Shown: positions 1,524 to 48,283 of the stretch, piece after piece | How positions within the stretch are numbered: the stretch's first letter is position 1 | How the letters are laid out: the number at the start of each line of letters is the position of its first letter | Sequence record: NC_041917.1 | DNA length: 64,000 nt | Strand: one strand, 5' to 3' | Program-made: the position numbers and the translations under genes | Notes under the pieces: generated by a model | Told to the model about the DNA's origin: nothing | What the model saw: the letters and a program-made list of their open reading frames with translations, nothing else | The model's database searches: none

Positions 1524-1756
1524 AACTTGTAGCAATCGAACGAATTGGTGATTTTTCTATGCCGTACTTGAAATTGTTCAAAGGTTCAGAAGATTCACCA
1601 TCACCTGAAGTAGTACTGGCAGAATTGGAAGCAGTTAATTATCAAATTAATGTATTCTCAGATCAGGATGAAAAATTAGATAAACAAATGACTCGTATTC
1701 TTAACCGTAATGGTTATACGGAGTTTGAACCACCAACGGTCACGATTAGTGACTAA
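1520..1756 (+). CDS. hypothetical protein
   Basis: AGGAG RBS, coupled ORF. Confidence 0.7.
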   Translation: MKLVAIERIGDFSMPYLKLFKGSEDSPSPEVVLAELEAVNYQINVFSDQDEKLDKQMTRILNRNGYTEFEPPTVTISD

Positions 1757-1763
1757 TTAATTT

Positions 1764-1879
1764 GCAGTGATCGTCTAGAGGCTTAGGACACGAAAAAGCG
1801 ATTCTTGGTTAAGAATCTTACGGCATCAATAAACTTTCATTTCACGAACGTAACGCAGGTTCGAATCCTGCTCACTGCA
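1764..1879 (+). tRNA. tRNA-Glu(UUC) interrupted by a 43-nt insertion (1793-1835)
   Basis: Acceptor GCAGTGA/TCACTGC; T-arm GCAGG-TTCGAAT-CCTGC; removing the insert gives CG|TTC-ATTTCAC-GAACG. Confidence 0.85.
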
Positions 1880-1897
1880 CTAATATTGGAGTAATAT

Positions 1898-2200
1898 ATG
1901 AAAAGTATTCTTCTCTTTGAGTACTTCGCAACTGGCGAAGGTTGGCGTACTGTAATCCGCTTCTATAATCAGAATCGTGTTTCTGATGAGGCTGCACTGG
2001 AAACATTAAAATCAGAATTCGATCCATATTTTCATGTAGGATTTGAATTGCATGATATTAGTACTGTCAAGGATAATGCATCCTTAATGCGTACTTTGAA
2101 AGAACATGTTCCAATTTTGTACAATTATGTTATGTTACCAGATGATGCATATCATCCAGTAATTAATGTAAAATATGAAGGTTATGTAAACTATTCATAA
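1898..2200 (+). CDS. hypothetical protein
   Basis: GGAG RBS. Confidence 0.75.
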   Translation: MKSILLFEYFATGEGWRTVIRFYNQNRVSDEAALETLKSEFDPYFHVGFELHDISTVKDNASLMRTLKEHVPILYNYVMLPDDAYHPVINVKYEGYVNYS

Positions 2201-2209
2201 AAATAATTT

Positions 2210-2335
2210 GTGGGGTTAGCTCAGTCTGGTAGAGCAGCGAAAGAAAAAACAATGGAATCTTGAAAAGGATTCTAACAGCATTATATCTTCTACTGTAAAT
2301 TCGCAGGTCGGTGAGTTCAAATCCACCATCCCACA
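2210..2335 (+). tRNA. tRNA-Tyr(GUA)-like gene interrupted by a ~51-nt insertion (2242-2292)
   Basis: Acceptor GTGGGGT/ATCCCAC; D-arm GCTC..GAGC; GCGAA|CTGTAAA-TTCGC after removal; short variable loop and bulged T-stem are atypical. Confidence 0.75.
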
Positions 2336-2408
2336 CAAATTTGTCTTGACATGGTGTATCCTGTGTGTTATATTACTATCATCAATTAAACGAGATAGGA
2401 TTTAAATT

Positions 2409-2681
2409 ATGGACGGGATTGCAATGCGTATTCAAGTCTTACCGAATGGTTTGATTATTGGTCATGTTGTTCCAAAAGAACATCCAGCAAATCGCTGTTA
2501 TAATTTGGAACCGAACCATGTATATGAACTTCAAATTGATCTTACTTATGGTAACGATAAATTGAAAAACATTGGCGAAGCCGATTTTAAAACTTCTGAT
2601 GTTGATCCTCGTGGTTGTAGTATCGACCACTTGATTGCAGTAAGCAGTGGGCGTCATTTAACCGTGAATGATGGGAAATAA
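2409..2681 (+). CDS. hypothetical protein
   Basis: AGGA RBS; TTGACA promoter upstream. Confidence 0.65.
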   Translation: MDGIAMRIQVLPNGLIIGHVVPKEHPANRCYNLEPNHVYELQIDLTYGNDKLKNIGEADFKTSDVDPRGCSIDHLIAVSSGRHLTVNDGK

Positions 2682-2683
2682 AA

Positions 2684-3049
2684 ATGAAAGTATTCATTGA
2701 TGATATTCGTGACCCAAAAAATTACTTGACACCAGAACAGGCTGATGGTATTATTTGGATCAAAGAGTGGTGGTCAGCAAAACGCTTTTTGATTGATCAT
2801 GCTGCTGAAATTGAAGTGATTCATTTTGACCATTACATGGATGAACCAACGTTAACTGGTAAAGATTTATTCTTTATGGTTGCTGGGGATTGTATGTGGG
2901 GTGGAAAAGAAACATGGATTAAACTACAGAAAATTTATTTACATTCTTCTGATGTTGATATGGTTGAAGAACTTGTTGAAGAATATAGTACTGAATTGGC
3001 TGAATCTGGTGTTGAGCTTATTGATAACCATCAAGAAAGGAACTACTAA
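2684..3049 (+). CDS. cyclic-phosphate-processing receiver-like domain protein
   Basis: KVFIDDIRDP ... IHFDHYMD ... GKDLF ... IYLHSS pattern recognised by eye. Confidence 0.6.
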   Translation: MKVFIDDIRDPKNYLTPEQADGIIWIKEWWSAKRFLIDHAAEIEVIHFDHYMDEPTLTGKDLFFMVAGDCMWGGKETWIKLQKIYLHSSDVDMVEELVEEYSTELAESGVELIDNHQERNY

Positions 3050-3406
3050 ATGAAAGTTTATGTAGATGATATTCGTAATCCACAAAACCATCTAAGTTCT
3101 GAACAGGCAGCCGATGTAGTGTGGATTAAAGAATGGTGGGATGCACGTAACTTTATCTTTTATAATAATTTAGAAATTGAAGTGATTCATTTAGATAATT
3201 ATCTAGGTGACCGTACCCACACTGGTGCTGATTTACTTCGAATGATTACATATAGGTTTCGCCGTGGGGAATTCCCTAAGTTGAAACAAATTTATCTTCA
3301 CAGTTCTGATAAAGATATTGTGAATAAACTGTATGACACACATATTGAATGTTGTACAGAAGCTGGTGTTGAATTAATTAAAAATTCACGTCCAAACCGT
3401 AGTTAA
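3050..3406 (+). CDS. cyclic-phosphate-processing receiver-like domain protein (paralogue)
   Basis: KVYVDDIRNP ... IHLDNYLG ... GADLL ... IYLHSS; tandem paralogue of 2684..3049. Confidence 0.6.
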   Translation: MKVYVDDIRNPQNHLSSEQAADVVWIKEWWDARNFIFYNNLEIEVIHLDNYLGDRTHTGADLLRMITYRFRRGEFPKLKQIYLHSSDKDIVNKLYDTHIECCTEAGVELIKNSRPNRS

Positions 3407-3412
3407 ACAAAT

Positions 3413-3537
3413 GGCGAGTTAGCTCAGTTGGTAGAGCACGTAGAAACCCAAGATTCAAGTACTTGAATCTTACAGCAACAATAACTCATACACTTTTAAT
3501 GTCGTGGTCGTTGGTTCGAATCCAACACTCGCCGCCA
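3413..3537 (+). tRNA. tRNA-Lys(UUU) interrupted by a 49-nt insertion (3441-3489)
   Basis: Acceptor GGCGAGT/ACTCGCC plus G-CCA; CG|ACA-CTTTTAA-TGTCG after removal; T-arm GTTGG-TTCGAAT-CCAAC. Confidence 0.9.
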
Positions 3538-3554
3538 AATAATAAGGAGTACAT

Positions 3555-3761
3555 ATGTTCCTTGATGAAATTAAATCTGTTCCATTCCCAAGCTATAAAG
3601 CTTTGGAAAAATCACGTAACGAATCGTCTAAGTCTGTTAATCCAACAACTTATGATCGTTATGAAAAGTACCATTATCCTGCTGGTACAGAATTCCGTTT
3701 AGCAAAAGCTATTGATTCTGTAATTGTAAAAATTAAAAAGGTAATTAACTATGTCGGTTAA
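3555..3761 (+). CDS. hypothetical protein
   Basis: AAGGAG RBS. Confidence 0.7.
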   Translation: MFLDEIKSVPFPSYKALEKSRNESSKSVNPTTYDRYEKYHYPAGTEFRLAKAIDSVIVKIKKVINYVG

Positions 3762-6957: not shown

Positions 6958-7363
6958 AATTATTTGTGGATTTCCTGGTATAGGTAAGAGTAGTATTAAA
7001 AATATCGGCAAAGTACTTGATTTGGATAGTTCTTTGTATACCAAGAATTCTTTATTTCCTGCTAATTATATTGTTGATATTGTATCTGCAATGGATGAAT
7101 ATGATTATATTTTGGTAAGTACGCATGACGTACTTAGAAAAGAATTACAATCATTGGGTATTAGTTATACTAATGTATATCCAGAGATTGATTTAGGTGA
7201 AGAATACCACGAACGTTATGTTCAACGCGGAAGTCCTGAAAGTTTTATTAATTTTATTGATGAAAATTGGGATGACTTCATATACGAATTGCAGTATGAT
7301 GATTCTGAATATGTTGAACTGGAAAGCGGTCAATTTCTTTCAGATATTATAGCAAATATTTGA
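6950..7363 (+). CDS. P-loop kinase/NTPase
   Basis: Walker A GFPGIGKS near N-terminus, small NMP-kinase-like size. Confidence 0.7.
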   Translation: MAKIICGFPGIGKSSIKNIGKVLDLDSSLYTKNSLFPANYIVDIVSAMDEYDYILVSTHDVLRKELQSLGISYTNVYPEIDLGEEYHERYVQRGSPESFINFIDENWDDFIYELQYDDSEYVELESGQFLSDIIANI

Positions 7364-7389
7364 AACGAAAGAAAAAATTGTGGTATAAT
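7361..7389 (+). promoter_or_regulatory. TGAAAC-N17-TATAAT promoter (RNA-gene class)
   Basis: TGAAAC ... TGGTATAAT; five more copies in the window. Confidence 0.7.
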
Positions 7390-7406
7390 ATAGTACATAA
7401 GGCAAC

Positions 7407-7523
7407 GGAATCTTACAGCAAAAATACTAATTTTTGATGAAAACGAAACGACGAGGTTCGAATCCTCACCCACGAATTGCCTTATTATTAGTGGGAGCAC
7501 GGTGCTGGATAAACAAAGATTCC
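7407..7523 (+). ncRNA. ACAGCA element bracketing a degenerate permuted tRNA (Ile GAU-like)
   Basis: GGAATCTT-ACAGCA ... AAGATTCC; GAGG-TTCGAAT-CCTC precedes CCCAC..GTGGG. Confidence 0.7.
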
Positions 7524-7584
7524 AGAATTTAAGTTAGAAAATTATGAAACAAATCAAAAATTTGTGGTATAATATAAGAAGTAA

Positions 7585-7691
7585 AGCGGGATGGTGATTG
7601 ATGAAAGCTATTATTTGATTCTAGAAAATCATAATAAGTGAGTAAGAGAACAGGGTTCTTAATATCACGAGGGTTCGATCCCCTGTCGCTG
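7585..7691 (+). pseudogene. degenerate Leu(UAG)-like tRNA
   Basis: TGATT-CTAGAA-AATCA hairpin, variable-arm hairpin, AGGG-TTCGAT-CCCT; poor acceptor and D arms. Confidence 0.35.
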
Positions 7692-7706
7692 CACAAAGCA
7701 ACAAAC

Positions 7707-7824
7707 GAAATCTCACAGCAAACAAAACAATTTTTTTCCTTGCATAGAAAAACGGTGGGGTTCGATTCCCCAACATCCAAGTTGCTTTTAGGATGTGTCT
7801 GGAAGGCCGTATGACAAAGATTTC
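7707..7824 (+). ncRNA. ACAGCA element bracketing a degenerate permuted tRNA (Ala UGC-like)
   Basis: GAAATCT-C-ACAGCA ... AGATTTC; CTTGCAT loop, GGGG-TTCGATT-CCCC, ACATCC..GGATGT. Confidence 0.7.
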
Positions 7825-8000
7825 AGTTCCTATCAACTAAAAAGGATAGCATATAATGAGTTCTGAAGAAAATTTAGAATTATTAAATAAAATAATGAAT
7901 GCCATTGCAAATGGTAAATTGAGTGAAACAATGACTGAACTTGGTTACGAAGTAACTAAGAGTACTGATAAAAGTACAGAATGGTCATTAAAACAATAAT

Positions 8001-8074
8001 GTTCTGTTAGACAAATTGGTAAAGTCACCACCCTTTCAAGGTGGGGTTTACGGGTTCGACCCCCGTACAGAACG
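8001..8074 (+). tRNA. tRNA-Glu(UUC)
   Basis: CCACC-CTTTCAA-GGTGG; acceptor GTTCTGT/ACAGAAC. Confidence 0.95.
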
Positions 8075-8079
8075 CTAAA

Positions 8080-8192
8080 GGATTCGCACAGCAACAATAA
8101 AATCTTAAAATTCAATTGGTGAAAACAACCTTGCAGTTCGATTCTGCTTCCACAATGTGTGGATCTGGTGATGGATAGAAAAAACCGAATCC
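8080..8192 (+). ncRNA. ACAGCA element bracketing a highly degenerate permuted tRNA
   Basis: GGATTCG-C-ACAGCA ... AGAAA..CGAATCC; GCAG-TTCGATT-CTGC then TCCAC-AATGT-GTGGA. Confidence 0.65.
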
Positions 8193-8231
8193 TGATTTTA
8201 ATTAAGAAGTACTAAAGAATTTGATACACAC

Positions 8232-8384
8232 GGATTTATACAGCAAACATAATCCTAAAATAAAACATACGATAATGTTACTAACTCGGAATTCGTTCCC
8301 TTCGTTAGTACTTGGCAACTTGGGTACTTAAATAAGTTGTATCACCTCACGTGTATCGGATTAGAGGTGATTATAAATAAATCC
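8232..8384 (+). ncRNA. ACAGCA element with multi-hairpin cargo
   Basis: GGATTTAT-ACAGCA ... ATAAATCC; internal GGAA-TTCG-TTCC, CAACTT/AAGTTG, ATCACCTC/GAGGTGAT. Confidence 0.65.
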
Positions 8385-8392
8385 AGTAACAC

Positions 8393-8418
8393 AAAAGTAC
8401 CTTGAACGGTACTTTTTT
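8393..8418 (+). terminator. intrinsic terminator
   Basis: AAAAGTACC-TTGAAC-GGTACTTTTTT. Confidence 0.7.
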
Positions 8419-8420
8419 AT

Positions 8421-8513
8421 GGTAGGTTGGCAGAGTTTGGCTTATTGCACTTGTCTTGAAAACAAGCGGGGGTTAACAGCCCTCCGAGGGTTCAAATCCC
8501 TCACCTACCTCCA
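8421..8513 (+). tRNA. tRNA-Ser(UGA)
   Basis: CTTGT-CTTGAAA-ACAAG, long variable arm, CCA. Confidence 0.95.
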
Positions 8514-8530
8514 ATACAATAAAGGTGAAC

Positions 8531-8842
8531 ATGATGGATTCAGTTGGTTTAATCGTTGTGTTTTTAGAACAACGTGTTCGTGGTTCTCATGAAATACATT
8601 ATGTAGTACAAGTTACTGAAGAAGGAACTTGTGACGTTCATGTTACGGACTCATGGAGTTTTAAGTCATGGGAAGATTTAAAAGAAACGCATCCTACTTT
8701 CAAAAGTTTGTTATATGAATTTTTTAATTCTTGCAATTGGGCACCTTATGTAAACGAAAAAGAAATTTGGGCTGATGAAGTAATCGGCGGCGAAGGTCTT
8801 TATGATGATTATGATTCACATGTATTAAGTACTGATTTGTAA
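8531..8842 (+). CDS. hypothetical protein
   Basis: AAGGTG RBS. Confidence 0.7.
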   Translation: MMDSVGLIVVFLEQRVRGSHEIHYVVQVTEEGTCDVHVTDSWSFKSWEDLKETHPTFKSLLYEFFNSCNWAPYVNEKEIWADEVIGGEGLYDDYDSHVLSTDL

Positions 8843-8850
8843 AGTTCAAT

Positions 8851-8925
8851 GGGGTACGTAGCTCAGTCTGGTAGAGCAGCCATGCGAAAACGGTGTGTCG
8901 GTGGTTCGAATCCACTCGCTCCCCA
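8851..8925 (+). pseudogene. pseudo-tRNA (Phe GAA-like, damaged anticodon arm)
   Basis: Good D and T arms; acceptor has 2 mismatches; anticodon stem poorly paired around GCGAAAA. Confidence 0.5.
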
Positions 8926-8929
8926 CTAA

Positions 8930-8986
8930 GGAATCTAGCAGCAACCATAACCCAATCAAACTTTTAATTTGACAATTATGGATTCC
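8930..8986 (+). ncRNA. ACAGCA element carrying an isolated Lys(UUU) anticodon stem-loop
   Basis: GGAATCT-A-GCAGCA ... TCAAA-CTTTTAA-TTTGA ... GGATTCC. Confidence 0.75.
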
Positions 8987-9164
8987 CGTTATTTTTAAGG
9001 ATGTGATATGTCTAAAGAACAAGATGATTTTGAAAAAGAATATCTTATAAGTAAGCGTATTGATCCAAAAGCAACATTTTATATAAAATCTCGTAGAAAG
9101 AAAAATGGTTATAGAACTCGTGAATTGAATAATAAATTTCAAGAATTTCTTAAACGATTTAAAG

Positions 9165-9256
9165 GGTAAAGTGGCAGAGCGGCTGAATGCAACCGCTTGG
9201 AAAGCGGTCAGGTTAGGTAATCCCTAGCCTCGTAGGTTCAAATCCTATCTTTACCG
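9165..9256 (+). tRNA. tRNA-Ser(GGA)
   Basis: ACCGC-TTGGAAA-GCGGT, long variable arm. Confidence 0.9.
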
Positions 9257-9308
9257 CAAAGTAATAACTCCTTATTAAAGTGAAGTACAAAAACAACAGG
9301 AGAATATT

Positions 9309-9665
9309 ATGTACGAGAAAGATGATGGTCCATTAACTGATGAACAAATTCGTATCATCCGTGAAATGAATAGCCATCTGAATCAAACTGATTTAGAAAT
9401 TGATTTAAATTGGTTGAACAGTGATATACAAGGAAATGCAATGTATTACGACTATTATTACAAAGTTGACGGTGACCTTCGTCGTTATACCAGTAATCAA
9501 GAGTTAACGGATGCGGAAATCAATAATATTTTTGGTGCAAGCAAACAAGTAGTAATGCTTACTCCAATTGTATTTGAACGTGACGTAACTACTGAAGACA
9601 AATCTGGTAAAAAGATTAAAAGTACTGAAAAAGTACATGTTGGCTTCTTAGGATATGTGGAATAA
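9309..9665 (+). CDS. hypothetical protein
   Basis: AGGAG RBS. Confidence 0.7.
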   Translation: MYEKDDGPLTDEQIRIIREMNSHLNQTDLEIDLNWLNSDIQGNAMYYDYYYKVDGDLRRYTSNQELTDAEINNIFGASKQVVMLTPIVFERDVTTEDKSGKKIKSTEKVHVGFLGYVE

Positions 9666-9667
9666 AA

Positions 9668-10354
9668 ATGTCAAAAAAGACTGATAAAGAAGTAAAAGAT
9701 ACAAAAGAAAAGTACACTGTTGTTAAACACGGCTCACTAACACTAGTGAATACACCAACAGTAAAAACTTTCTATATGAATGGTTCTATTGATCATCCTA
9801 CATTAACTAAGTTCCAAAAGTTCTTAGAAGATACATGTACGGAAAATAATAAAATTGATACCGAAGAAACTGAACGCAAAGAAAAGGATGAATTTAAAAA
9901 GATTCATGATCCTGAATCTAAGCCAGAGTTTGTTCCTGCTAAACGTAAAGTTGAGCGTATCAATCTGGTTATCAATAGTGGTGGTGGTTTAGTTGCAGTA
10001 ATGCTAGAAGTTGTAGCACTAATGAAAACTTCACCAATTCCAATTGATACCTACTGTTTTGGTTCTGCAATGAGTGCAGCTTTCTTTATCTTCTTACATG
10101 GCAAACGCCGTTTTGTTGGTGAAGGTGCCTCATTTATGACACATAGCATTGGTGCTATGGCATGGGATAATGTACCAAACATGACAATTCGTATGGAGTA
10201 CTTGGTTAAACAAAACGAGTACGCACAACAGGAAATTGCTAAACGTACTGGAATTCCTCTTGAAAAATTAAAAGAGAAAGAACATCTCGATTGGTACTTG
10301 ACTGCTGAAGAAGCGTTAGATGTTAAAATCGGTGAATATTTGATCCGAGATTAA
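9668..10354 (+). CDS. clpP: ClpP-like serine protease
   Basis: INSGGG, AMSAA (catalytic Ser), MTHS (His), DWYLTAEEA. Confidence 0.85.
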   Translation: MSKKTDKEVKDTKEKYTVVKHGSLTLVNTPTVKTFYMNGSIDHPTLTKFQKFLEDTCTENNKIDTEETERKEKDEFKKIHDPESKPEFVPAKRKVERINLVINSGGGLVAVMLEVVALMKTSPIPIDTYCFGSAMSAAFFIFLHGKRRFVGEGASFMTHSIGAMAWDNVPNMTIRMEYLVKQNEYAQQEIAKRTGIPLEKLKEKEHLDWYLTAEEALDVKIGEYLIRD

Positions 10355-10400
10355 ATATAAATTCTGGATTCGAAAGAATCCTTTTTTAAGTGAGATGATT

Positions 10401-10625
10401 ATGGACAATCAACACAAACATATTAAAGGGTATCGTGACCTTTCACAAAAAGAAGTGGATGCGATGAATGAGATTAAACAACTGGCTGCCACCATTGGAG
10501 AGTTGATAGAAAAACTTGAAAGTACTGAATCAGTAGATAAACGTTGGCTTGCAATTGCAAAGACGGATTTACAAAAAGGATTCATGTCAGCAGTACGAAG
10601 TGTGGCTAAACCAGATTCCTTCTAA
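10401..10625 (+). CDS. acb2: anti-CBASS nucleotide sponge Acb2 (T4 Vs.4-like)
   Basis: MDNQHKHIKGYRDLSQ ... RWLAIAKTDLQKGFMSAVRSVAKPDSF closely follows the Acb2/Vs.4 signature. Confidence 0.9.
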   Translation: MDNQHKHIKGYRDLSQKEVDAMNEIKQLAATIGELIEKLESTESVDKRWLAIAKTDLQKGFMSAVRSVAKPDSF

Positions 10626-10634
10626 GGAACAAAG

Positions 10635-11015
10635 ATGTATACAACGGTTAATCATGCTGATATAATTGATGATATTATAACTGAAATACTTGAAATTTAT
10701 ACATGTCGAGTTGAAATTTATAAAGATGGTCATTTATTCACTCAGTACGGGTATAATACTAAACATAATGTGAATTATCATATAAATGTAAAGTACTATA
10801 ATGATAATCCAAGTAATGGTGATAAAGCGAATAGCTTAATGGTAGAATTTAAATTTACCAATAGAGTTCCGAAGGGACTAAAAAATCATTACAAGTTATC
10901 TATACCTGAAATAACAAGTCTTACAGAAGAACGGCATTTTCAATTAATGTTTATCACTGATGATATGTATTTGGATTATGAAGTTATAAATAAATTACGT
11001 ACACATATTGTGTAA
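10635..11015 (+). CDS. hypothetical protein (EExxFQ family)
   Basis: EERHFQL motif. Confidence 0.7.
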   Translation: MYTTVNHADIIDDIITEILEIYTCRVEIYKDGHLFTQYGYNTKHNVNYHINVKYYNDNPSNGDKANSLMVEFKFTNRVPKGLKNHYKLSIPEITSLTEERHFQLMFITDDMYLDYEVINKLRTHIV

Positions 11016-11023
11016 AAAAGTTT

Positions 11024-11077
11024 TAGAATCTAACAGCAATCAAAACTCATTGGATATATGAAAAAAGATAGATTCTA
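11024..11077 (+). ncRNA. minimal ACAGCA element
   Basis: TAGAATCTA-ACAGCA ... TCAT-TGGATAT-ATGA ... TAGATTCTA. Confidence 0.75.
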
Positions 11078-11083
11078 GTATTT

Positions 11084-11156
11084 GGGAATATAATTCAGTT
11101 GGTAGAATGCTCGACCGATAATCGAGTCGCCGCTGGTTCGAGTCCAGCTATTCCCA
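11084..11156 (+). tRNA. tRNA-Ile(GAU)
   Basis: CTCGA-CCGATAA-TCGAG (C33 rather than U33). Confidence 0.9.
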
Positions 11157-11255
11157 CGAAGTAGTTCAGTACTGAAAAATGTACAGTGAAATTATTCAAC
11201 ACTATAGGTAGCACTTTGAATGAATCAGTAAGCCTATAAGTAACTACAATAAATT

Positions 11256-11384
11256 TGGAATTCAACAGCAATTCACTTACTAAAAACAGCTACCTCACGG
11301 TTTGTAGGTTCAAGTCCTACCTTGTACTTTCGAGTACATGTGGTGAAAATGGTAAACACGGCTGTCCAAAAGAAATGAATTCCA
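11256..11384 (+). tRNA. circularly permuted tRNA-Leu (probably UAA) inside an ACAGCA element
   Basis: 3' half (ACAGC, variable arm, T-arm, CTTGTAC) precedes TTTCGA linker and 5' half (GTACATG, D-arm, GCTGT). Confidence 0.85.
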
Positions 11385-11436
11385 GTATTAATTAAGACAT
11401 AAATATTCTTATACACTTTTTTGTAAGGATATAATT

Positions 11437-12036
11437 ATGGAAATGAAAAAGTTGATGGAAGATATTTCTGCCATCATGGAAGGACAACTACCTGGTTATT
11501 ATTATCATGGAAGTTCTGCCCCAATATCAAATTTTAGTGATGAGTTTGTTGGTAGAGGAAATGATGAATACGGTCCGGGAATATATTTTAGTTCAGTTCC
11601 AAATACTTCTATAGGTTATGCAAAAGATGGCGGTTCTAATGGAATGGTATATCAGTGCGAAATCAATTTAAGAAAAGAACTATCTAAAAAAACTAGAGTT
11701 AATAAAGCAGTACTATTAAAATTAATGCAAAATACACCTGATGAAGATGCATATACTAACTGGAATGAAAATAAAAATGTTGCTTATAGAACAGCATTAC
11801 AGGGTTATGTAGATGAAGGTAATATGTATGATGCGTTAATGGGTGTTTGGTACGATTGGTATAGAGAATATCCTGTTCAATTCGTGCGTTCACTAGTACA
11901 GTTAGGATATGATGGATACATATATACTTTTGCAAGCGGTGAACGTTTTATTATAGTATATAATCCAGCAAGTATAAAAGTTGTAAACACATTCAATCCA
12001 GAAGAAGCTATGCAGAAACTGATTGGAAGTGAATAA
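11437..12036 (+). CDS. ADP-ribosyltransferase-like protein
   Basis: YHGS ... GPGIYFS ... ERFIIVYNP pattern of ART-fold (ART-PolyVal-like) domains. Confidence 0.55.
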   Translation: MEMKKLMEDISAIMEGQLPGYYYHGSSAPISNFSDEFVGRGNDEYGPGIYFSSVPNTSIGYAKDGGSNGMVYQCEINLRKELSKKTRVNKAVLLKLMQNTPDEDAYTNWNENKNVAYRTALQGYVDEGNMYDALMGVWYDWYREYPVQFVRSLVQLGYDGYIYTFASGERFIIVYNPASIKVVNTFNPEEAMQKLIGSE

Positions 12037-12043
12037 TAAGATT

Positions 12044-12163
12044 TGGAATTCAACAGCAAATCATTCTAAACCCGTAGCATGTCGTAGGTTCAAGTCCTAC
12101 CAGTACTATCGAGTACTGTAGCTCAGTTGGTAGAGCAGCCACCTTAAAAAGAAATGAATTCCA
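12044..12163 (+). tRNA. circularly permuted class I tRNA inside an ACAGCA element (anticodon uncertain)
   Basis: GTAGC-ATGTC-T-arm-CAGTACT-ATCG-AGTACTG-TA-GCTCAGTTGGTAGAGC-A-GCCAC. Confidence 0.8.
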
Positions 12164-12194
12164 GTATTAATTAAAACAACATGAGTATAAATCA

Positions 12195-12644
12195 ATGTCT
12201 GATAAGCATCAATTTAAAGTAAACATCGGTGATTGGTCACAAGATGGTCATAATCAATATGATGTTTTAGTTCTTAACAGTACTAAACCAGTAGATGAAG
12301 TACAAAAAGCATTTAAAAAAGCTGCAACAGATTTACATTTACTAGTAAATGGTCGTTTTCTAATTGCAGATGAATTTGAAGATTGTAGTCTATCTGAAGA
12401 CCATGCAGAAGTTCTTAAAAATGCAGGTGTAAAATTTGATGATTTAGTGTATAATGATGGCGATGATGAAGAACCAAATTATATTATTGAAGGTTCAAGT
12501 GATATGACTATCCTAGTGATGCGTATCGCCCAACTTGAATTGGACTTTGAATTTGAAATTACGAATGATGCAATTCCGAACTTTAACGGGTTCTGGACAG
12601 AAGAACAAATGCCATCAATCGGATATGGTTTGTATAACATATAA
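12195..12644 (+). CDS. hypothetical protein
   Basis: ORF track. Confidence 0.75.
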   Translation: MSDKHQFKVNIGDWSQDGHNQYDVLVLNSTKPVDEVQKAFKKAATDLHLLVNGRFLIADEFEDCSLSEDHAEVLKNAGVKFDDLVYNDGDDEEPNYIIEGSSDMTILVMRIAQLELDFEFEITNDAIPNFNGFWTEEQMPSIGYGLYNI

Positions 12645-12653
12645 AACAAGTTT

Positions 12654-12718
12654 TGGAATCTAGCAGCACCCATAAAATGAAATCAACTGTTAATTGAAAA
12701 ATTCAAAAATGGATTCCA
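12654..12718 (+). ncRNA. ACAGCA element carrying an isolated Asn(GUU) anticodon stem-loop
   Basis: TGGAATCT-A-GCAGCA ... TCAA-CTGTTAA-TTGA ... GGATTCCA. Confidence 0.7.
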
Positions 12719-12738
12719 GCCTATTTCGGAGTAAAAAA

Positions 12739-13008
12739 ATGTATTATGCTCGATTAGAATATCCAAACAATGGATATGAGATTGAAAGAATACGTCTTAA
12801 AGCCTTAGATCGCAAAAAGTACTATCCAGTAGTTTCGATTGATATTGGTAGTTCAAGTACTCGCATATATCTTGAAGGTGATAAGAATGCATATAATAGT
12901 GTGAACTTTGAATTCTATACCAAACATGGTGATGAATATATTCTTGAAGATATTTTCGAAGACCCTGATTTAAACCCGTACTTGGATGATGATGACGAAG
13001 AATATTAA
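12739..13008 (+). CDS. hypothetical protein
   Basis: ATG 12739 after GGAG. Confidence 0.7.
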   Translation: MYYARLEYPNNGYEIERIRLKALDRKKYYPVVSIDIGSSSTRIYLEGDKNAYNSVNFEFYTKHGDEYILEDIFEDPDLNPYLDDDDEEY

Positions 13009-13076
13009 ATAAAAATACCACAAATAAATGAAACGCTTCAAAAAATTGTGGTATAATATAAGTAAGTTAAACAAGA

Positions 13077-13148
13077 GGTTATGTCGTATAAAGGTTATTA
13101 CGGAGAGCTGTTAACTCTTTTATCTTGGTTCGATTCCAAGCATGACCG
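13077..13148 (+). tRNA. tRNA-Asn(GUU)
   Basis: GAGAG-CTGTTAA-CTCTT; acceptor GGTTATG/CATGACC; atypical D-arm. Confidence 0.85.
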
Positions 13149-13265
13149 CAAAAAGTTAAATTCACCAGGCGTACTATGGTGGGAAAGGTATCATGATACC
13201 AATTCGAATAGAATACGTATTAAACCCTTGAACGGTTTTCTGTAAACTCAATTTAACAAATAATT

Positions 13266-13320
13266 AAGAATCTAACAGCAATAAAAACTCATTCGATTAT
13301 ATGAAAAAAGATAGATTCTT
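13266..13320 (+). ncRNA. minimal ACAGCA element
   Basis: AAGAATCTA-ACAGCA ... TAGATTCTT; near copy of 11024-11077. Confidence 0.75.
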
Positions 13321-13325
13321 GTTTT

Positions 13326-13398
13326 AGGAGTATGGTGTAATTGGTTAGCACACGTGACTTTGACTCACGTAGTTGAGGTTCGAGTCCTTATATTCCTG
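13326..13398 (+). tRNA. tRNA-Gln(UUG)
   Basis: CGTGA-CTTTGAC-TCACG. Confidence 0.95.
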
Positions 13399-13549
13399 CA
13401 AATTAAAATTTCATTCATTTCCTTGTGTGAAACAAGCTGGTATGATTCCCCTTGCTTGTAAAATTATCGAACGGGAACCGCGTTGCACCTGTACAGGTCA
13501 GATTGTAAAGATCGAGTATGTACAGTACTGAGAGCGGCAGTACAACAAA

Positions 13550-13631
13550 GCGGGATTAGCTCAGTGGTAGAGCACTTGCCTTCCAAGCAAGAGGCGAATA
13601 GGTTCCATCGGTTCGAATCCGATATTCCGCT
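13550..13631 (+). tRNA. tRNA-Gly(UCC) with 15-nt variable region
   Basis: CTTGC-CTTCCAA-GCAAG; U73. Confidence 0.9.
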
Positions 13632-13749
13632 CAAACTAAACAAACAATAAGGTGATTTTTATGCTATAGAATCCTAGTACTGGTCCTCCTAAAGAATTTA
13701 ATTCTGATATAAACAACTCAAAATTAAACTACTATAGGAAGAACATACC

Positions 13750-14076
13750 ATGTTAAACAAAGAACAATATATTACTGTAAAAAATACTTGGAAAGCTGTA
13801 AAAGAACATAACATTTTTGATCATGTGATCTATAATGTACTTCGTGGAGTCCCATCTGATACTGGTTTCGCACCAATTACAGACAGGGGTCGTTTACACG
13901 CTAACAACAATGACCCGTTCAATATGTACAATTTCGCAGTTCGTGAAATTCATTATGAATTAAACGAAAAACGGTACAATTACGAAAAGACAGTAAAGCA
14001 TTATTCTGAACTATTCGGCATTGAATTTACAAAAGAACTCATCGAAGAAATTGTTTCTTTGATTAAAGTTAAATAA
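13750..14076 (+). CDS. hypothetical protein
   Basis: AGGAAG RBS. Confidence 0.7.
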   Translation: MLNKEQYITVKNTWKAVKEHNIFDHVIYNVLRGVPSDTGFAPITDRGRLHANNNDPFNMYNFAVREIHYELNEKRYNYEKTVKHYSELFGIEFTKELIEEIVSLIKVK

Positions 14077-14084
14077 CAGAATTA

Positions 14085-14141
14085 AAGAATCCAGCAGCAA
14101 CTAAAACTCATTCGCTTAATATGAAAAAGAAACGGATTCTT
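14085..14141 (+). ncRNA. minimal ACAGCA element
   Basis: AAGAATCC-A-GCAGCA ... AGAAA-C-GGATTCTT. Confidence 0.75.
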
Positions 14142-14161
14142 GTTTTTATTTGGAAAACGAT

Positions 14162-14389
14162 ATGAAACGTAACTACTTCCATTTTGTTACTTTTACTAAA
14201 CCAAAGGTATCTACAACTAAAAGTGCAGACGATGTTGCACAATTAATTGAAGATACTATCAATAAAATGCAAGAAGATGGTGAAAAATATGGAGAAATTC
14301 ATATTGATATGCCAGAAGACTTAACACCAGAAGAACAACAAATGTTCATAGAAGAAATTATGAAACGGTTTGGTGGAACTGATGAGTAA
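14162..14389 (+). CDS. hypothetical protein
   Basis: ORF track, ATG 14162. Confidence 0.65.
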   Translation: MKRNYFHFVTFTKPKVSTTKSADDVAQLIEDTINKMQEDGEKYGEIHIDMPEDLTPEEQQMFIEEIMKRFGGTDE

Positions 14390-20064: not shown

Positions 20065-20151
20065 GGGTCGTTCACTCAGTTGGTTAGAGTACCGGACTTT
20101 TAATCCGGCGGGTATATCCCATCGAAGGTTCGAATCCTTCACGGCCTACCA
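20065..20151 (+). tRNA. tRNA-Lys(UUU) with long variable arm
   Basis: CCGGA-CTTTTAA-TCCGG then GGG-TATAT-CCC arm; CCA. Confidence 0.9.
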
Positions 20152-22448: not shown

Positions 22449-22533
22449 GGCATCGTCGCATAGCGGCAATTGCAGGAGACTGTAAATCTCTCGCCTTCGG
22501 GCTTCGTTGGTTCGAGTCCAACCGGTGCCACCA
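22449..22533 (+). tRNA. tRNA-Tyr(GUA)
   Basis: GGAGA-CTGTAAA-TCTCT, UUCG variable arm, CCA. Confidence 0.95.
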
Positions 22534-37210: not shown

Positions 37211-38203
37211 GTGAGCATCAAAAAGCTAAACTTAGATGAAATTCAGGATGAGATTCTAGATGAGTGTTTTAACAGTGAAGATAAAACACTTGACTCGTTA
37301 GTTGTCGATGAAGATGATTTCGAAGTAGAAAGTACTGAAGAAGTTATCGATACTGGTCTAACTATGGATAAGATTAAATCCAAAGTAAAAACAGAGCAGT
37401 ACATCAGTAATGAAGTTTTAGTTCGTAATGTACAGAATAATATTGATGTTGAACGTTCAAAAGAACTTCTAATCATGTTCAACAGTGGTTTAGTGTATAA
37501 CGAAGCAAAGAACTGTACTTGTAACATTCCGTTCCAAGATAAAGTACAATACGGTTTTGAAGGATTAATGAAAGCTATCTATGGTTTCAATACAAACTTC
37601 AAAACAATGTTCAGTACTTATGCAACTACCGCGATCCGTCAACATATGTACCGAAACGGAAACAACGATGTGCGTATGGTAGCGTTACCAGAGCATCTAT
37701 CAATGCACAATATTCGCATCCAGAGCTTCATTGAGAAGACCATGCAGGACAGTACTGGCTACCCTACGCACGAACAGATCTCAGAGGGTACGGGCATTGA
37801 CATTCGTTCAGTGAAGCGTATAATGAACTACAACAGCAACACATTCAGCATCGACACCCCAATGAATCGCGGTGGGGATGAAGGGTCACAACAGACTCTA
37901 AAAGATATGATTCCTGGTGAAAGTGGGGATTACATCGTAGATGAACGTTGTGTAAGTAAAGACTTCCTAAGCACAATGGAAGATATTATGAATGAACTAG
38001 AAGAACATGAACGTGTATTGTTAGGTTTAGTTCATGGTTTAGATGGTTATCGTATTCATACATTTGATGAAATTATTAGTACTGGATATATCGACAGTAC
38101 TGGTAAGTATGTTTCATCTAAAGCAACATTATCTCGCCGTTATAGTGCTGTGATGGATAAAGTACGCCGCATTGTTGAACGTAAACAAATCAGTTTTGAC
38201 TAA
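37211..38203 (+). CDS. sigma-70 family RNA polymerase sigma factor
   Basis: Region 2 GLMKAIYGFN..FSTYATTAIRQ, ..VALPEH, region 3 PTHEQISEGTG, SIDTP. Confidence 0.85.
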   Translation: MSIKKLNLDEIQDEILDECFNSEDKTLDSLVVDEDDFEVESTEEVIDTGLTMDKIKSKVKTEQYISNEVLVRNVQNNIDVERSKELLIMFNSGLVYNEAKNCTCNIPFQDKVQYGFEGLMKAIYGFNTNFKTMFSTYATTAIRQHMYRNGNNDVRMVALPEHLSMHNIRIQSFIEKTMQDSTGYPTHEQISEGTGIDIRSVKRIMNYNSNTFSIDTPMNRGGDEGSQQTLKDMIPGESGDYIVDERCVSKDFLSTMEDIMNELEEHERVLLGLVHGLDGYRIHTFDEIISTGYIDSTGKYVSSKATLSRRYSAVMDKVRRIVERKQISFD

Positions 38204-47928: not shown

Positions 47929-48201
47929 ATGATTCGACCAGATATGAACGTTATTCAACGTTGGAATACCGTTAAGGTTTCTGATCTTCCAGAACTTCTA
48001 AAATCACAGGGATTTAATTTTGTAAAATCTTTTAGTACTGATGAACATAGGATTTTTGTTAGTCAAGATAATTCATTGATGATAATTTTTGAACGTAATG
48101 TAGGGAAAGTGTATAGTACTCGAAATCGTAAACAGTCTTTACATTCATTCACTGTAGTACCAGAAGGTCCAAAGTTAAATCAAATAAAACGTGCTGAATA
48201 A
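47929..48201 (+). CDS. hypothetical protein
   Basis: AAGGA RBS. Confidence 0.7.
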   Translation: MIRPDMNVIQRWNTVKVSDLPELLKSQGFNFVKSFSTDEHRIFVSQDNSLMIIFERNVGKVYSTRNRKQSLHSFTVVPEGPKLNQIKRAE

Positions 48202-48283
48202 AAACAAAAAAGGGGTTGACTTAGGTCAGCCCCTTTGCTATTATACTAGCATTGAAACAGATAACCTTTTAAGTGAGATACTA

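What the first reader, a model, noticed from the sequence alone, without database searches (positions are those of the whole stretch)
2210..2335. tRNA-Tyr(GUA)-like gene with a ~51-nt insertion near positions 30-32 and a GNRA-capped stem
Seen: GCGAA (2237-2241) and CTGTAAA-TTCGC (2293-2304) form a perfect arm once 2242-2292 is removed. The insert starts with AGAAA and has GGAATCTT-GAAA-AGGATTCT then A-ACAGCA. The insertion point differs from the Glu and Lys genes, so the element tolerates different sites. The body has a short variable loop, unlike bacterial class II tRNA-Tyr. Inference: it may act as a decoy rather than a translating tRNA. Established: tRNA-Tyr is a target of colicin E5 and of the retron Ec78 PtuAB effector.
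Basis: partly seen in the sequence, partly recalled or inferred. Interest (0 to 1): 0.72.

Follow-up and report, generated by a model that had tools for sequence, protein, structure and literature searches.

The report
Conserved RNA module interrupting phage tRNA-like genes
The interrupted tRNA-Tyr-like gene is real, and its 51-base insert is one copy of an undescribed RNA module that large phages carry many times in their tRNA clusters, probably marking small RNAs that imitate host tRNA anticodon arms.

Summary
Window 2210-2335 (Serratia phage BF) is a tRNA-Tyr(GUA)-like gene with a 51-nt insert (2242-2292) between anticodon-stem position 31 and the loop CTGTAAA. The insert is not private to this gene. 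It is one of 14 same-strand copies in the window of a module made of a ~10-bp helix (P1), a 3' strand NN-RCAGCAA, and an A-rich 5' strand. The module comes in three layouts:
- A: a hairpin inside the anticodon arm of a tRNA (1764-1879, 2210-2335, 3413-3537).
- B: P1 closing ~50 nt that carries a small hairpin, in some copies with a host-like anticodon loop.
- C: P1 closing a circularly permuted tRNA-like body, YrlA-like in at least one copy.

At least 131 distinct copies turned up in tRNA clusters of Rak2-like and other large phages. Rfam and the held literature have nothing on it. In this gene the P1-to-loop stretch is 51/51 identical between BF and Yersinia phage fHe-Yen9-04, against 84% in the flanking ORF. 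Orthologous A-type genes swap anticodons (Lys/Ile/Glu/Asp; Glu/opal/Gln).

Best reading (0.4): an unspliced tRNA mimic, perhaps a decoy for anticodon nucleases. Splicing is the main rival (0.25). Only RNA mapping can settle it.

The parts
2210..2335 (+). A2: tRNA-Tyr(GUA)-like gene interrupted by the module (the finding)
   Evidence: Sequence; ARAGORN calls tRNA-Tyr(gta) once 2242-2292 is removed; model R1 96.6 bits, but this gene was in the training set; orthologs only in Eneladusvirus, 94% identical against 84% for the flanking ORF.
2242..2292 (+). 51-nt module copy: A-rich 5' strand 2242-2253, P1 hairpin 2254-2273 (GAAA loop), ACAGCA box 2275-2280, linker to 2292
   Evidence: From 2254 to 2304 (P1, 3' strand, loop, 3' stem) it is 51/51 identical between BF and Yen9-03/04.
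2293..2299 (+). CTGTAAA, a 7-nt anticodon-loop-like segment (U33, GUA, A37); by my recollection identical to the E. coli tRNA-Tyr loop
   Evidence: Its homolog on contig L048 is a 10-nt CTAAGTAAAA.
1764..1879 (+). A1: tRNA-Glu(UUC)-like gene with a 43-nt module copy (1793-1835) between positions 28 and 29
3413..3537 (+). A3: tRNA-Lys(UUU)-like gene with encoded CCA and a 49-nt module copy (3441-3489) between positions 28 and 29
   Evidence: Rfam tRNA 48.6 bits with a 62-nt insertion.
7405..7525 (+). C-type copy: P1 (7408-7412 with 7518-7522) closes a T arm and a closed acceptor-like stem
7705..7826 (+). C-type copy; its P1 is AAATC/GATTT
8078..8194 (+). C-type copy directly after tRNA-Glu; its P1 is GATTC/GAATC
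8230..8386 (+). C-type copy, 151-nt span; its P1 is GATTT/AAATC
8928..8988 (+). B-type copy with hairpin TCAAA-CTTTTAA-TTTGA (Lys-like loop)
11023..11078 (+). B-type copy ending 8 nt before tRNA-Ile
11255..11385 (+). C-type copy: permuted tRNA-like body with a long variable arm
12043..12164 (+). C-type copy: permuted tRNA-like body (T arm, acceptor closed by a 4-nt loop, D arm, anticodon stem formed between the two ends)
   Evidence: Rfam YrlA partial match 40.3 bits, E 4.6e-8; compensatory changes in the six-phage alignment A1.
12653..12719 (+). B-type copy with hairpin TCAA-CTGTTAA-TTGA (Asn-like loop)
13265..13321 (+). B-type copy ending 7 nt before tRNA-Gln
14084..14142 (+). B-type copy
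2684..3406 (+). Two tandem cREC_REC (cyclic-phosphate processing receiver domain) genes, 2684-3049 and 3050-3406, between A2 and A3. Any link to the module is weak.
   Evidence: Pfam PF20274, E 5.8e-8 and 6.4e-11. The pair occurs in the same Eneladus/Mimas clade, but fENko-Kae01 has the module and gives no cREC hit.

Best explanation
Window 2210-2335 is a gene descended from a phage tRNA-Tyr. It keeps a Tyr-type acceptor stem, A73 and the loop CUGUAAA. Its anticodon arm carries a 51-nt copy of a conserved phage RNA module: a ~10-bp helix P1, a 3' strand NN-RCAGCAA followed by G-poor sequence, and an A-rich 5' strand.

Shown: the module is an RNA-level structure on the + strand. It is under purifying selection, is repeated 14 times in this phage's tRNA cluster, and recurs in other large phages in three layouts:
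- inside a tRNA anticodon arm;
- closing a small hairpin, in some copies with an anticodon-like loop;
- closing a permuted tRNA-like body with a closed acceptor stem.

Inferred: the module is not removed. The transcript, cut out of its operon by ordinary tRNA processing, persists as a ~126-nt tRNA-like small RNA. It shows an authentic host-type anticodon-loop sequence but cannot work on the ribosome, because of the large insertion at the loop and the bulged T stem. The module would be the family's shared handle, clamping ends or stabilising the RNA and probably binding one common protein.

The family as a whole would mimic host tRNAs that anticodon-arm nucleases attack (Lys, Glu, Gln, Asp, Asn, Tyr), soaking up or inhibiting those nucleases or related loop-recognising enzymes.
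For: - **The module is real and repeated.** 13 motif hits against 1.8 expected, all on the + strand, each with a complementary 5-mer.
- **P1 is an RNA helix.** The pairs flanking the 5-mer I required to pair covary (UA/AU, AU/GC, UA/UG/CG), with 88.7% paired against 26-51% when the partner is slid. The A-type alignment is 87.4% paired, with 22 of 29 pairs changed on both sides. U.G wobbles and the strand bias point to RNA on the + strand.
- **The insert is selected.** 51/51 identity from P1 to the 3' stem against 84% in the flanking ORF (P about 1.5e-4). The acceptor pair 5-68 reads G.U, A-U and G-C in three lineages.
- **The same module sits in RNAs that cannot be tRNAs.** B copies are P1 plus a weak 4-5-bp hairpin. 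C copies have closed acceptor stems and no CCA.
- **Host-type loops recur on different stems.** CTTTTAA appears on a TCAAA stem in BF and on an ACAAAA stem on contig L051. CTGTTAA is kept across six phages.
- **A-type orthologs swap anticodons but mostly keep a 7-nt U33/R37 loop**:
  - the A3 locus reads Lys, Ile, Glu or Asp;
  - the A1 locus reads Glu, opal or Gln.
- **This gene looks poorly suited to translation.**
  - It has a bulged T stem in both BF and Yen9-04.
  - Its L048 homolog has a 10-nt loop.
  - The phage already has a normal class II tRNA-Tyr at 22449-22533.
- **No insert-free copies.** None was found for A1 or A2 in viral or metagenome contigs.
- **Phage tRNAs are known counters to tRNA-cutting defences.** See PMC11555353 and PMC12445682.
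Against: - No experiment or RNA data bear on whether the insert stays in the mature RNA.
- The tRNA bodies of A-type genes are fully maintained: acceptor and T stems are 100% paired with compensatory changes, and A3 encodes CCA. A mimic of the anticodon arm alone would not need this.
- Most A-type loops keep the U33/R37 decoding signature, which also fits working tRNAs that change identity.
- In this gene the CUGUAAA segment is not closed into a 7-nt loop unless the insert is removed, so its mimicry of an anticodon loop is imperfect.
- No partner protein has been identified.
- The B-type hairpins are thermodynamically weak, about -1 kcal/mol.
- A decoy does not obviously need a sequence-conserved module.
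Confidence: 0.4

Rival explanations
1. The module is a true intervening sequence. An endonuclease, host or phage, cuts on both sides of it where the exons are held in a continuous helix. Phage RNA-repair enzymes (cREC phosphoesterase, kinase, RNA ligase) then join the exons. The products are working tRNA-Tyr, -Glu and -Lys 'rescue' tRNAs, and the permuted copies would circularise.
For: - Removing the inserts gives clean cloverleaves with canonical 7-nt loops.
- The lower anticodon stem across the insertion covaries: ACA/TGT, ACT/AGT, AGC/GCT.
- The tRNA bodies are conserved and A3 encodes CCA.
- In A1 and A3 the insert emerges from an otherwise continuous helix at 28/29, a nick-like geometry that would suit a ligase.
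- Two cREC genes lie between A2 and A3.
- The clade encodes two RNA ligases (CBB paper, PMC5259590).
- The type A / type C relationship is the one seen between intron-bearing and permuted tRNA genes.
Against: - There is no bulge-helix-bulge motif.
- There is no constant distance from P1 to the junctions: 7-13 nt on the 5' side, 18-21 nt on the 3' side.
- The junctions share no consensus nucleotides.
- B and C copies would give nothing useful if spliced: closed acceptors, no CCA, non-conserved loop regions.
- Some A-type orthologs have 8- or 10-nt loops.
- This gene has a T-stem bulge and lacks the class II variable arm.
- fENko-Kae01 has the module and gave no cREC match.
- No such splicing pathway is known in bacteria or phages.
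Confidence: 0.25
2. The module is a generic processing and stability cassette of the tRNA operons. It would act as an end-clamping helix plus a recognition strand for an RNase or RNA-binding protein, punctuating polycistronic tRNA/mRNA transcripts. The copies inside tRNAs are secondary, and the interrupted tRNAs themselves have little function.
For: - B copies abut tRNA ends within 3-10 nt.
- The family is confined to tRNA clusters and to the tRNA strand.
- Nucleotides just outside P1 are conserved: G at +3 in 96% of copies, and an A-rich upstream strand.
- A2 sits at the end of a transcription unit just before a strong promoter-like site at 2346-2374.
Against: - The interrupted tRNA bodies and their anticodon stems are kept by compensatory change.
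- The inner hairpins of B copies are selectively conserved while their flanks drift.
- A processing signal inside an anticodon arm has no evident use.
Confidence: 0.15
3. The module is a small self-cleaving and/or self-ligating ribozyme of a new class. It would excise itself from type A transcripts or circularise type B and C transcripts.
For: - Its size (45-60 nt), conserved junction strands around a helix, and natural circular permutation are all typical of small ribozymes.
- Its products, a cyclic phosphate and a 5'-OH, would suit cREC and RNA-repair enzymes.
Against: - No match to any Rfam ribozyme at E up to 10.
- Only about 7 nt are strongly conserved and the opposite strand has no fixed register.
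- Junction distances vary.
Confidence: 0.07
4. The tRNA works in translation with the module still in place, as an 'armoured' tRNA whose altered anticodon arm escapes nucleases that cut anticodon stems or loops.
For: - The tRNA body and loop signature are maintained.
- Phage tRNAs do escape P2-OLD through changes in the anticodon stem (PMC12445682).
Against: - A 43-51-nt branch at 28/29 or 31/32 should clash in the decoding site. This is my inference from general ribosome structure.
- In this gene the loop is opened by the insert.
- B and C copies are left unexplained.
Confidence: 0.05
5. It is a selfish repeat (MITE-like DNA element) or a decaying pseudogene with no RNA function.
For: - The element has inverted-repeat ends, many copies, and presence/absence differences between phages.
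- Kaldavass has a decayed A2 homolog.
Against: - All copies are on one strand.
- U.G wobbles pair only as RNA on that strand.
- Copies sit at orthologous positions.
- Conservation in the insert is above the ORF level.
- No target-site duplications were seen.
Confidence: 0.05

Closest known systems
YrlA / bacterial Y RNA-like RNAs (Rfam RF02553; Chen et al. 2014, PMC4201824)
   Same: The type C copy at 12043-12164 has the same permuted tRNA-like module: anticodon-like stem, T arm, acceptor stem closed by a loop, D arm. The RNA ends lie in a terminal helix at the anticodon side. Rfam gives a partial match of 40.3 bits, E 4.6e-8. YrlA RNAs are also phage-encoded in some cases.
   Different: The match is below Rfam's gathering score of 69. 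The terminal part is P1 plus RCAGCAA, not the Rsr-binding GNCGAAN0-1G motif. No TROVE/Ro60 gene turned up among the 34 of the window's more than 100 ORFs that I scanned. There are 14 copies per genome. Types A and B have no YrlA counterpart.
Permuted and intron-bearing tRNA genes of archaea and Cyanidioschyzon merolae (reviewed in PMC4090602)
   Same: Short insertions occur at non-canonical positions of the anticodon arm. The 3' half lies before the 5' half in type C. The A/C relationship is a circular permutation through the insert.
   Different: There is no bulge-helix-bulge motif. The acceptor stems of type C are closed, of varying length, and lack CCA. No splicing endonuclease is known in phages or their hosts. 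Splicing is untested.
Phage 'rescue' tRNAs that counter tRNA-cutting defences (T5 tRNA-Tyr against retron-Eco7 PtuAB, PMC11555353; phage tRNA-Thr against P2-OLD, PMC12445682; T5 tRNA-Lys against PARIS, bioRxiv 10.1101/2024.01.02.573894)
   Same: Both are phage-encoded copies of exactly the tRNA species that defence nucleases target. Both show changes in the anticodon arm.
   Different: Rescue tRNAs are ordinary, uninterrupted, translating tRNAs. Here the arm carries a ~50-nt module, and the sibling copies are not tRNAs at all.
T4 stable RNAs C and D (species 1 and 2) in the T4 tRNA cluster (from my own knowledge; not checked with the tools)
   Same: They are small stable RNAs of unknown function, co-transcribed and processed with phage tRNAs.
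   Different: I tested no sequence or structural relationship. This is a lead only.

Membership tests
tRNA (Rfam RF00005; canonical cloverleaf) | 7-bp acceptor stem, D arm with GG, T arm with TTCRANY loop | tested here: met
   Sequence; acceptor and T helices 100% paired in the 15-sequence alignment. The T stem has one bulged base (A2314; T in Yen9-04).
tRNA (Rfam RF00005; canonical cloverleaf) | 5-bp anticodon stem closing a 7-nt loop in the gene as encoded; detection by standard tools | tested here: not met
   ARAGORN finds nothing at 2210-2335. Rfam tRNA gives no match there even at E up to 10. Both are met only after 2242-2292 is deleted.
Bacterial tRNA-Tyr (class II) | Anticodon GUA, discriminator A73, long variable arm | tested here: not met
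   GUA and A73 are present, and the acceptor stem of the Yen9-04 ortholog is identical to that of fENko-Kae01 tRNA-Tyr. The variable loop is only 5 nt (AGGTC). The phage's own class II tRNA-Tyr is at 22449-22533.
Group I intron in a tRNA gene | An intron of roughly 200 nt or more with the P1-P9 core, inserted in the anticodon loop | tested here: not met
   The inserts are 43-51 nt. No Rfam intron match appears in 1700-3600 at E up to 10.
Archaeal/eukaryal protein-spliced tRNA intron | Bulge-helix-bulge (or relaxed hBH) at the two junctions; canonical site 37/38 | tested here: not met
   By inspection of A1, A2, A3 and their orthologs, no 3-nt bulges are separated by a 4-bp helix. The sites are 28/29 and 31/32.
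Permuted tRNA gene (C. merolae type) | 3' half upstream of 5' half | tested here: met
   Met for the type C siblings, for example 12043-12164. It does not apply to the finding's own gene, which is collinear.
Permuted tRNA gene (C. merolae type) | Processable acceptor end (7 bp, discriminator, linker or CCA) and a conserved anticodon loop after joining | tested here: not met
   The acceptor is closed by a loop of 0-4 nt, or by a ~30-nt insert in CBB. There is no CCA. The loop region differs in every ortholog.
YrlA / Y RNA-like (RF02553) | tRNA-like module with T arm, closed acceptor and D arm | tested here: met
   40.3 bits, E 4.6e-8 over model positions 24-84, for 12077-12139 only. The finding's own gene gives 16 bits, E 6.1, which is not significant.
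YrlA / Y RNA-like (RF02553) | Full-model score at or above gathering (69 bits) and the Rsr-binding motif GNCGAAN0-1G near the 5' end | tested here: not met
   Model positions 1-23 and 85-114 are unmatched. The motif as defined in PMC4201824 is absent from the conserved strands.
YrlA / Y RNA-like (RF02553) | Encoded next to a Ro60/TROVE (rsr) gene | tested here: inconclusive
   None of the 34 window ORFs I scanned against Pfam or NCBIfam is TROVE. Most small ORFs and the rest of the 357-kb genome were not scanned.
Known small self-cleaving ribozymes (hammerhead, hairpin, twister, pistol, hatchet, HDV-like) | Match to the family covariance model | tested here: not met
   No such match in 1700-3600 or 7300-14300 at E up to 5-10, nor at gathering score in the whole window.

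The most novel reading that the evidence does not exclude
Large phages run a tRNA splicing and circularisation pathway of their own. The P1/RCAGCAA module would be a new kind of intron-like cassette, cut and religated by phage RNA-repair enzymes (or by itself). It would yield on-demand tRNAs from interrupted genes and circular tRNA-like RNAs from permuted genes. That would be the first non-group-I tRNA introns and the first permuted tRNA genes in the bacterial/phage world.
Probability: 0.2. Interest if true: 0.95.

Novelty: new variant of a known kind. Interest (0 to 1): 0.8.

Why it matters
Phage tRNA clusters are now read as counter-defence arsenals against tRNA-cutting immune systems such as PrrC, PARIS, retron-Eco7 and OLD. 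This window shows a second, unannotated layer in those clusters: a conserved RNA module, found in at least 131 distinct copies across large phages, that marks interrupted tRNAs, permuted tRNA-like RNAs and mini anticodon hairpins. Public records annotate them as 'tRNA-Pseudo', 'tRNA-OTHER', wrongly typed tRNAs, or not at all.

If they are mimics, they would be RNA-based inhibitors of anticodon nucleases with fast-switching specificity. If they are spliced, bacteria-infecting viruses would have a tRNA splicing route not seen before. Either way the family gives a defined, testable handle: one motif and one likely protein partner. It also explains why tRNA finders mis-call these genes.

Tried and rejected
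- **Known RNA families.** Rfam at gathering score and at permissive E-values found only tRNA and a partial YrlA match, with no ribozyme, riboswitch or intron.
- **Bulge-helix-bulge and group I readings.** Both rejected on anatomy.
- **DNA-level readings (inverted-repeat mobile element, protein-binding palindrome).** Disfavoured by the one-strand bias, the U.G wobbles, the 45-150-nt variable spacing, and compensatory changes within copies.
- **Antisense partner for RCAGCAA.** Its complement is not enriched in the window.
- **Promoter or terminator reading of the P1 flanks.** Nothing convincing. The AT-rich TTAATTAA box downstream remains unexplained.
- **Functional link to the cREC genes.**
  - The pair occurs in the same clade.
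  - fENko-Kae01 has the module and gives no cREC hit.
  - Eowyn has cREC but no module copy in the ~8 kb around that gene.
  - So the link stays weak.
- **Insert-free copies of A1 and A2.** None in viral or metagenome contigs.
- **Brute-force deletion scan with ARAGORN to locate junctions.** Too permissive to be informative.
- **Extra helices in A2.** AGAA/TTCT and ACAG/CUGU are possible, but there is no variation to test them.
- **ToxI-type antitoxin RNA and CRISPR-repeat mimics.** Considered from memory only. The dispersed, non-tandem layout does not fit, and I ran no test.
- **Literature.** Nine searches found no description of the module.
Full report
**Source and observation.** The window is Serratia phage BF (Eneladusvirus, a Rak2-like jumbo phage). 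Window 1700-3600 is 100% identical to KY630187.

Every coordinate in the finding checks out in the sequence:
- acceptor 2210-2216 pairing with 2328-2334, discriminator A2335;
- D arm 2219-2235;
- anticodon stem GCGAA 2237-2241 pairing with TTCGC 2300-2304;
- insert 2242-2292 (51 nt), then CTGTAAA 2293-2299;
- 5-nt variable loop 2305-2309;
- T arm 2310-2327 with a bulged A2314.

ARAGORN and Rfam do not see the gene as it stands. With the 51 nt removed, ARAGORN calls tRNA-Tyr(gta). The neighbours at 1764-1879 and 3413-3537 become Glu(ttc) and Lys(ttt) when 43 and 49 nt are removed from between positions 28 and 29.

Public records label these genes inconsistently. They appear as tRNA-Pseudo, tRNA-OTHER, 'tRNA-Phe(aaa)', 'tRNA-Lys' of 125-127 nt, or nothing at all.

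**The insert is a family.** The three inserts share a hairpin (GATTC...GAATC or the reverse) followed by NN-RCRGCA. That motif occurs 13 times in the window, all on the + strand, between 1813 and 14099. Chance would give 1.8, and 0 of 100 shuffles reach 13. A 14th copy is at 8233.

Every copy has the exact reverse complement of its 5-mer, in one of three positions:
- **Type A (3 copies):** 8 nt upstream, forming a hairpin inside a tRNA.
- **Type B (5 copies):** 45-55 nt downstream.
- **Type C (6 copies):** 106-146 nt downstream.

Types B and C are circular permutations of type A. The helix P1 is then formed by the two ends of the element instead of being capped by a loop. The conserved strands keep their positions relative to P1.

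The 5-mer itself varies with its partner: GAATC/GATTC, GATTC/GAATC, AAATC/GATTT, GATTT/AAATC, GAATT/AATTC, and TAATT/AATTA in GAP32. My scan required only this 5-mer core to pair. In a 39-sequence type B alignment the pairs flanking that core covary. The four flanking pairs read UA 19/AU 13, AU 24/GC 13, UA 19/UG 9/CG 6, and AU 23/UA 5. Overall 88.7% of cells are paired, against 26-51% when the partner is slid.

The U.G wobbles and the absolute strand bias mean this is an RNA helix on the + strand, not a DNA palindrome.

Across 131 distinct copies (18 A, 70 B, 43 C) the consensus is as follows:
- R-A-W-T-Y, then NN, then R(88% A)-C-A-G-C-A-A, then G-poor sequence;
- on the other side, an A-rich strand (60-80% A), then P1, then Y-W-G, with the G at 96%.

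The counts come from my own pattern scan and may include a few false long-range pairs.

**What the layouts contain.** Type A keeps a complete tRNA. In a 15-sequence alignment from five phages the acceptor and T stems are 100% paired. Of 29 pairs, 22 show changes on both sides, and 87.4% of cells are paired against 36-46% when slid.

Type C at 12043-12164 runs as follows:
- the T arm;
- the acceptor stem, closed by a 4-nt loop;
- the D arm;
- the anticodon stem, formed between the two ends of the element.

Compensatory changes across BF, Yen9-04, GAP32, Kaldavass, XbC2 and CBB support that stem. Rfam's YrlA model matches the tRNA-like core at 40.3 bits, E 4.6e-8, which is below its gathering score of 69. 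The outer YrlA part, including the Rsr-binding motif described in PMC4201824, is absent.

The acceptor loop varies from none to ~30 nt, there is no CCA, and the would-be anticodon-loop region differs in every ortholog. These are therefore tRNA-like RNAs and not permuted tRNA genes in the C. merolae sense.

Type B holds only a weak 4-5-bp hairpin (about -1 kcal/mol). Some of these hairpins carry loops that, by my recollection, match host anticodon loops:
- CTTTTAA (Lys) at 8928-8988. The same loop sits on a different stem (ACAAAA/TTTTGT) in an unrelated 185-kb contig.
- CTGTTAA (Asn) at 12653-12719, kept in six phages.

Type B is what remains if the tRNA body is deleted from a permuted type A: the lower anticodon stem, the loop and the module. 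That derivation is my inference.

**Spread.** Pattern scans of IMG/VR and GenBank phages find the module in several groups:
- Eneladusvirus and Mimasvirus (BF, the pEa_SNUABM phages, fHe-Yen9-03/04, GAP32, CBB, Kaldavass, XbC2);
- Klebsiella phage fENko-Kae01;
- several uncultured contigs of 130-390 kb.

It always lies in tRNA clusters and on the tRNA strand.

A covariance model built from the type A alignment recovers nine more interrupted tRNAs that were not in its training set, at 64-119 bits. Two of the lineages are distant, and in them the insert is again at 28/29. E-values from that model are rough, and the finding's own gene was in the training set.

**Selection on the finding's gene.** Orthologs of 2210-2335 in GenBank phages exist only in Eneladusvirus. 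One further homolog sits on the uncultured contig behind L048. Identity between BF and Yen9-04 is as follows.

| Region | Identity |
|---|---|
| Upstream ORF (differences mostly at third codon positions) | 84% |
| Whole tRNA-like gene | 94% |
| P1 through the 3' anticodon-stem strand | 51/51 (P about 1.5e-4 at the ORF rate) |
| Downstream spacer | not alignable |

The three changes inside the insert all fall in the A-rich 5' strand. Acceptor pair 5-68 reads G.U, A-U and G-C in three lineages. The T-stem bulge is kept in position but not in identity (A or T). The same extra base appears in GAP32's A3.

The acceptor stem of the Yen9-04 ortholog is identical to that of fENko-Kae01's ordinary class II tRNA-Tyr; BF's differs at one pair. 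The T arm is close to it in both, which supports a tRNA-Tyr origin. So the gene is not a decayed pseudogene in BF and Yen9-04.

Two relatives tell against a conserved decoding role for this lineage. The homolog on contig L048 has a 10-nt CTAAGTAAAA in place of the loop. Kaldavass has a version that has lost P1.

**Anticodon switching.** Orthologous type A genes change anticodon between related phages.

| Lineage | Loop or anticodon | Where |
|---|---|---|
| Locus after the two cREC genes (A3) | CTTTTAA (Lys) | BF, GAP32, CBB |
| | ATGATAA (Ile GAU) | Yen9-04 |
| | CTTTCAC (Glu) | Kaldavass |
| | CTGTCAC (Asp) | contig L048 |
| A1 | UUC (Glu) | BF, GAP32, CBB |
| | UCA (opal; the Kaldavass loop is 8 nt) | Yen9-04, Kaldavass, L048 |
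| | UUG (Gln) | a distant lineage |
| A type A tRNA-Lys lineage in relatives (none in this window) | Lys loop | four phages |
| | 10-nt loop | CBB |

Most loops keep 7 nt with U33 and a purine at 37. Several appear to match whole host loops (Lys, Glu, Asp, Asn, Tyr; from memory). The species involved are those attacked by anticodon nucleases. That is established for tRNA-Tyr with retron-Eco7 PtuAB (PMC11555353) and for tRNA-Lys with PARIS (bioRxiv 10.1101/2024.01.02.573894). The colicin E5 and PrrC targets are from my own knowledge.

**Weighing the mechanisms.** Nothing in the sequence says directly whether the module is removed.

Against splicing:
- there is no bulge-helix-bulge motif;
- the junctions share no consensus;
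- the distance from P1 to the junctions varies (7-13 nt and 18-21 nt);
- no known ribozyme matches;
- the same module sits in B and C copies, where joining would produce nothing like a tRNA.

For splicing:
- deleting the insert gives perfect cloverleaves;
- the tRNA bodies are maintained, and A3 encodes CCA;
- at 28/29 the exons form a continuous helix;
- two cREC_REC phosphoesterase-type genes lie at 2684-3406;
- the clade is reported to encode RNA ligases, a TyrRS and a Thg1-like enzyme (PMC5259590).

The cREC link is weak. fENko-Kae01 has the module and gives no cREC hit, while Eowyn has cREC but no module copy in the ~8 kb around it.

The simplest single role that fits all three layouts is a retained handle on small RNAs that present anticodon-arm or tRNA-like shapes. 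For the finding's gene, that means a tRNA-Tyr mimic that cannot translate. I put 0.4 on this reading and spread the remainder as follows:
- 0.25 on protein-dependent splicing;
- 0.15 on a processing and stability cassette;
- the rest on a new ribozyme, an armoured translating tRNA, or a selfish repeat.

**Context.** The gene sits 10 nt after the stop codon of ORF 1898-2200, at the end of a transcription unit that probably starts at the promoter-like site 533-561. It lies just before another strong promoter-like site at 2346-2374. Its neighbours are small ORFs of unknown function. No insert-free copy of A1 or A2 exists in the viral or metagenome collections. Nine literature searches found no description of the module.

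**Limits.**
- All function statements are inference.
- The family census rests on a hand-made pattern that requires a perfect 5-bp core.
- Statements that loops equal E. coli anticodon loops, and the colicin and PrrC target lists, come from my own knowledge and not from a tool.
- The rest of the 357-kb genome was not searched for Ro60, RtcB or ligase genes.

Noticed in passing
window 2684-3049 and 3050-3406: Two tandem paralogous genes with the cyclic-phosphate processing receiver domain (cREC_REC, PF20274), an RNA-repair-associated fold, lie between the interrupted Tyr-like and Lys-like genes. The pair is kept in the whole Eneladus/Mimas clade.
   Followed up: partly
window 8852-8924: A tRNA-like gene (Rfam 36.4 bits, missed by ARAGORN) has two mismatches in its acceptor stem and no proper anticodon arm. 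A type B module copy follows it directly. In GAP32 and CBB the gene directly before the orthologous type B copy is a module-interrupted tRNA.
   Followed up: partly
window 13550-13632 and 20065-20151: Otherwise normal tRNA-Gly(UCC) and tRNA-Lys(UUU) carry long extra arms in the variable region (83 and 87 nt), which is unusual for class I tRNAs.
   Followed up: no
window 7393-7407 with 7474-7482; 7694-7701 with 7772-7779: In two type C groups the 5' leader just before P1 is complementary to the loop that closes the acceptor stem (ATAAGGCAA/TTGCCTTAT and AAAGCAAC/GTTGCTTT). Kaldavass and GAP32 show compensatory changes. This would be a pseudoknot or an alternative fold.
   Followed up: partly
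window, about 7-12 nt downstream of P1 in many B/C copies (e.g. 12166-12176, 11387-11397, 8199-8209): An AT-rich box resembling TTAATTAA recurs after the element in several phages. Its role (RNase site, promoter part, start region of the next gene) is unknown.
   Followed up: no
L005 7923-8036 (Yen9-04), L033 17248-17360 minus strand (Kaldavass), L048 10363-10476 minus strand: The Glu-type interrupted tRNA carries anticodon UCA (reads UGA) in these phages, instead of UUC. These phages are also annotated with amber suppressor tRNAs.
   Followed up: partly
window 11437-12036: An ORF with an ART-PolyVal ADP-ribosyltransferase domain (E 1.8e-11) sits between two type C copies.
   Followed up: no
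window 7590-7703: A tRNA-like 3' end (T arm plus acceptor-like strand) is preceded by a P1-like hairpin (TGATT...AATCA) without the RCAGCA box. It may be a divergent interrupted tRNA. It has its own extended -10 promoter-like site near 7565.
   Followed up: no
window 37211-38203, 48191-49153, 9668-10354, 52999-53634: A sigma-70-like factor, an HNH endonuclease, a ClpP-like protease and a DUF1190 protein. This is ordinary jumbo-phage content.
   Followed up: no
L023 about 390-480 (giant-virus MAG contig): Tandem units of a GATTCTTG...AAGAATC hairpin followed by ATACAGCAATTAAAAC resemble the module. This could be chance in an AT-rich genome.
   Followed up: no
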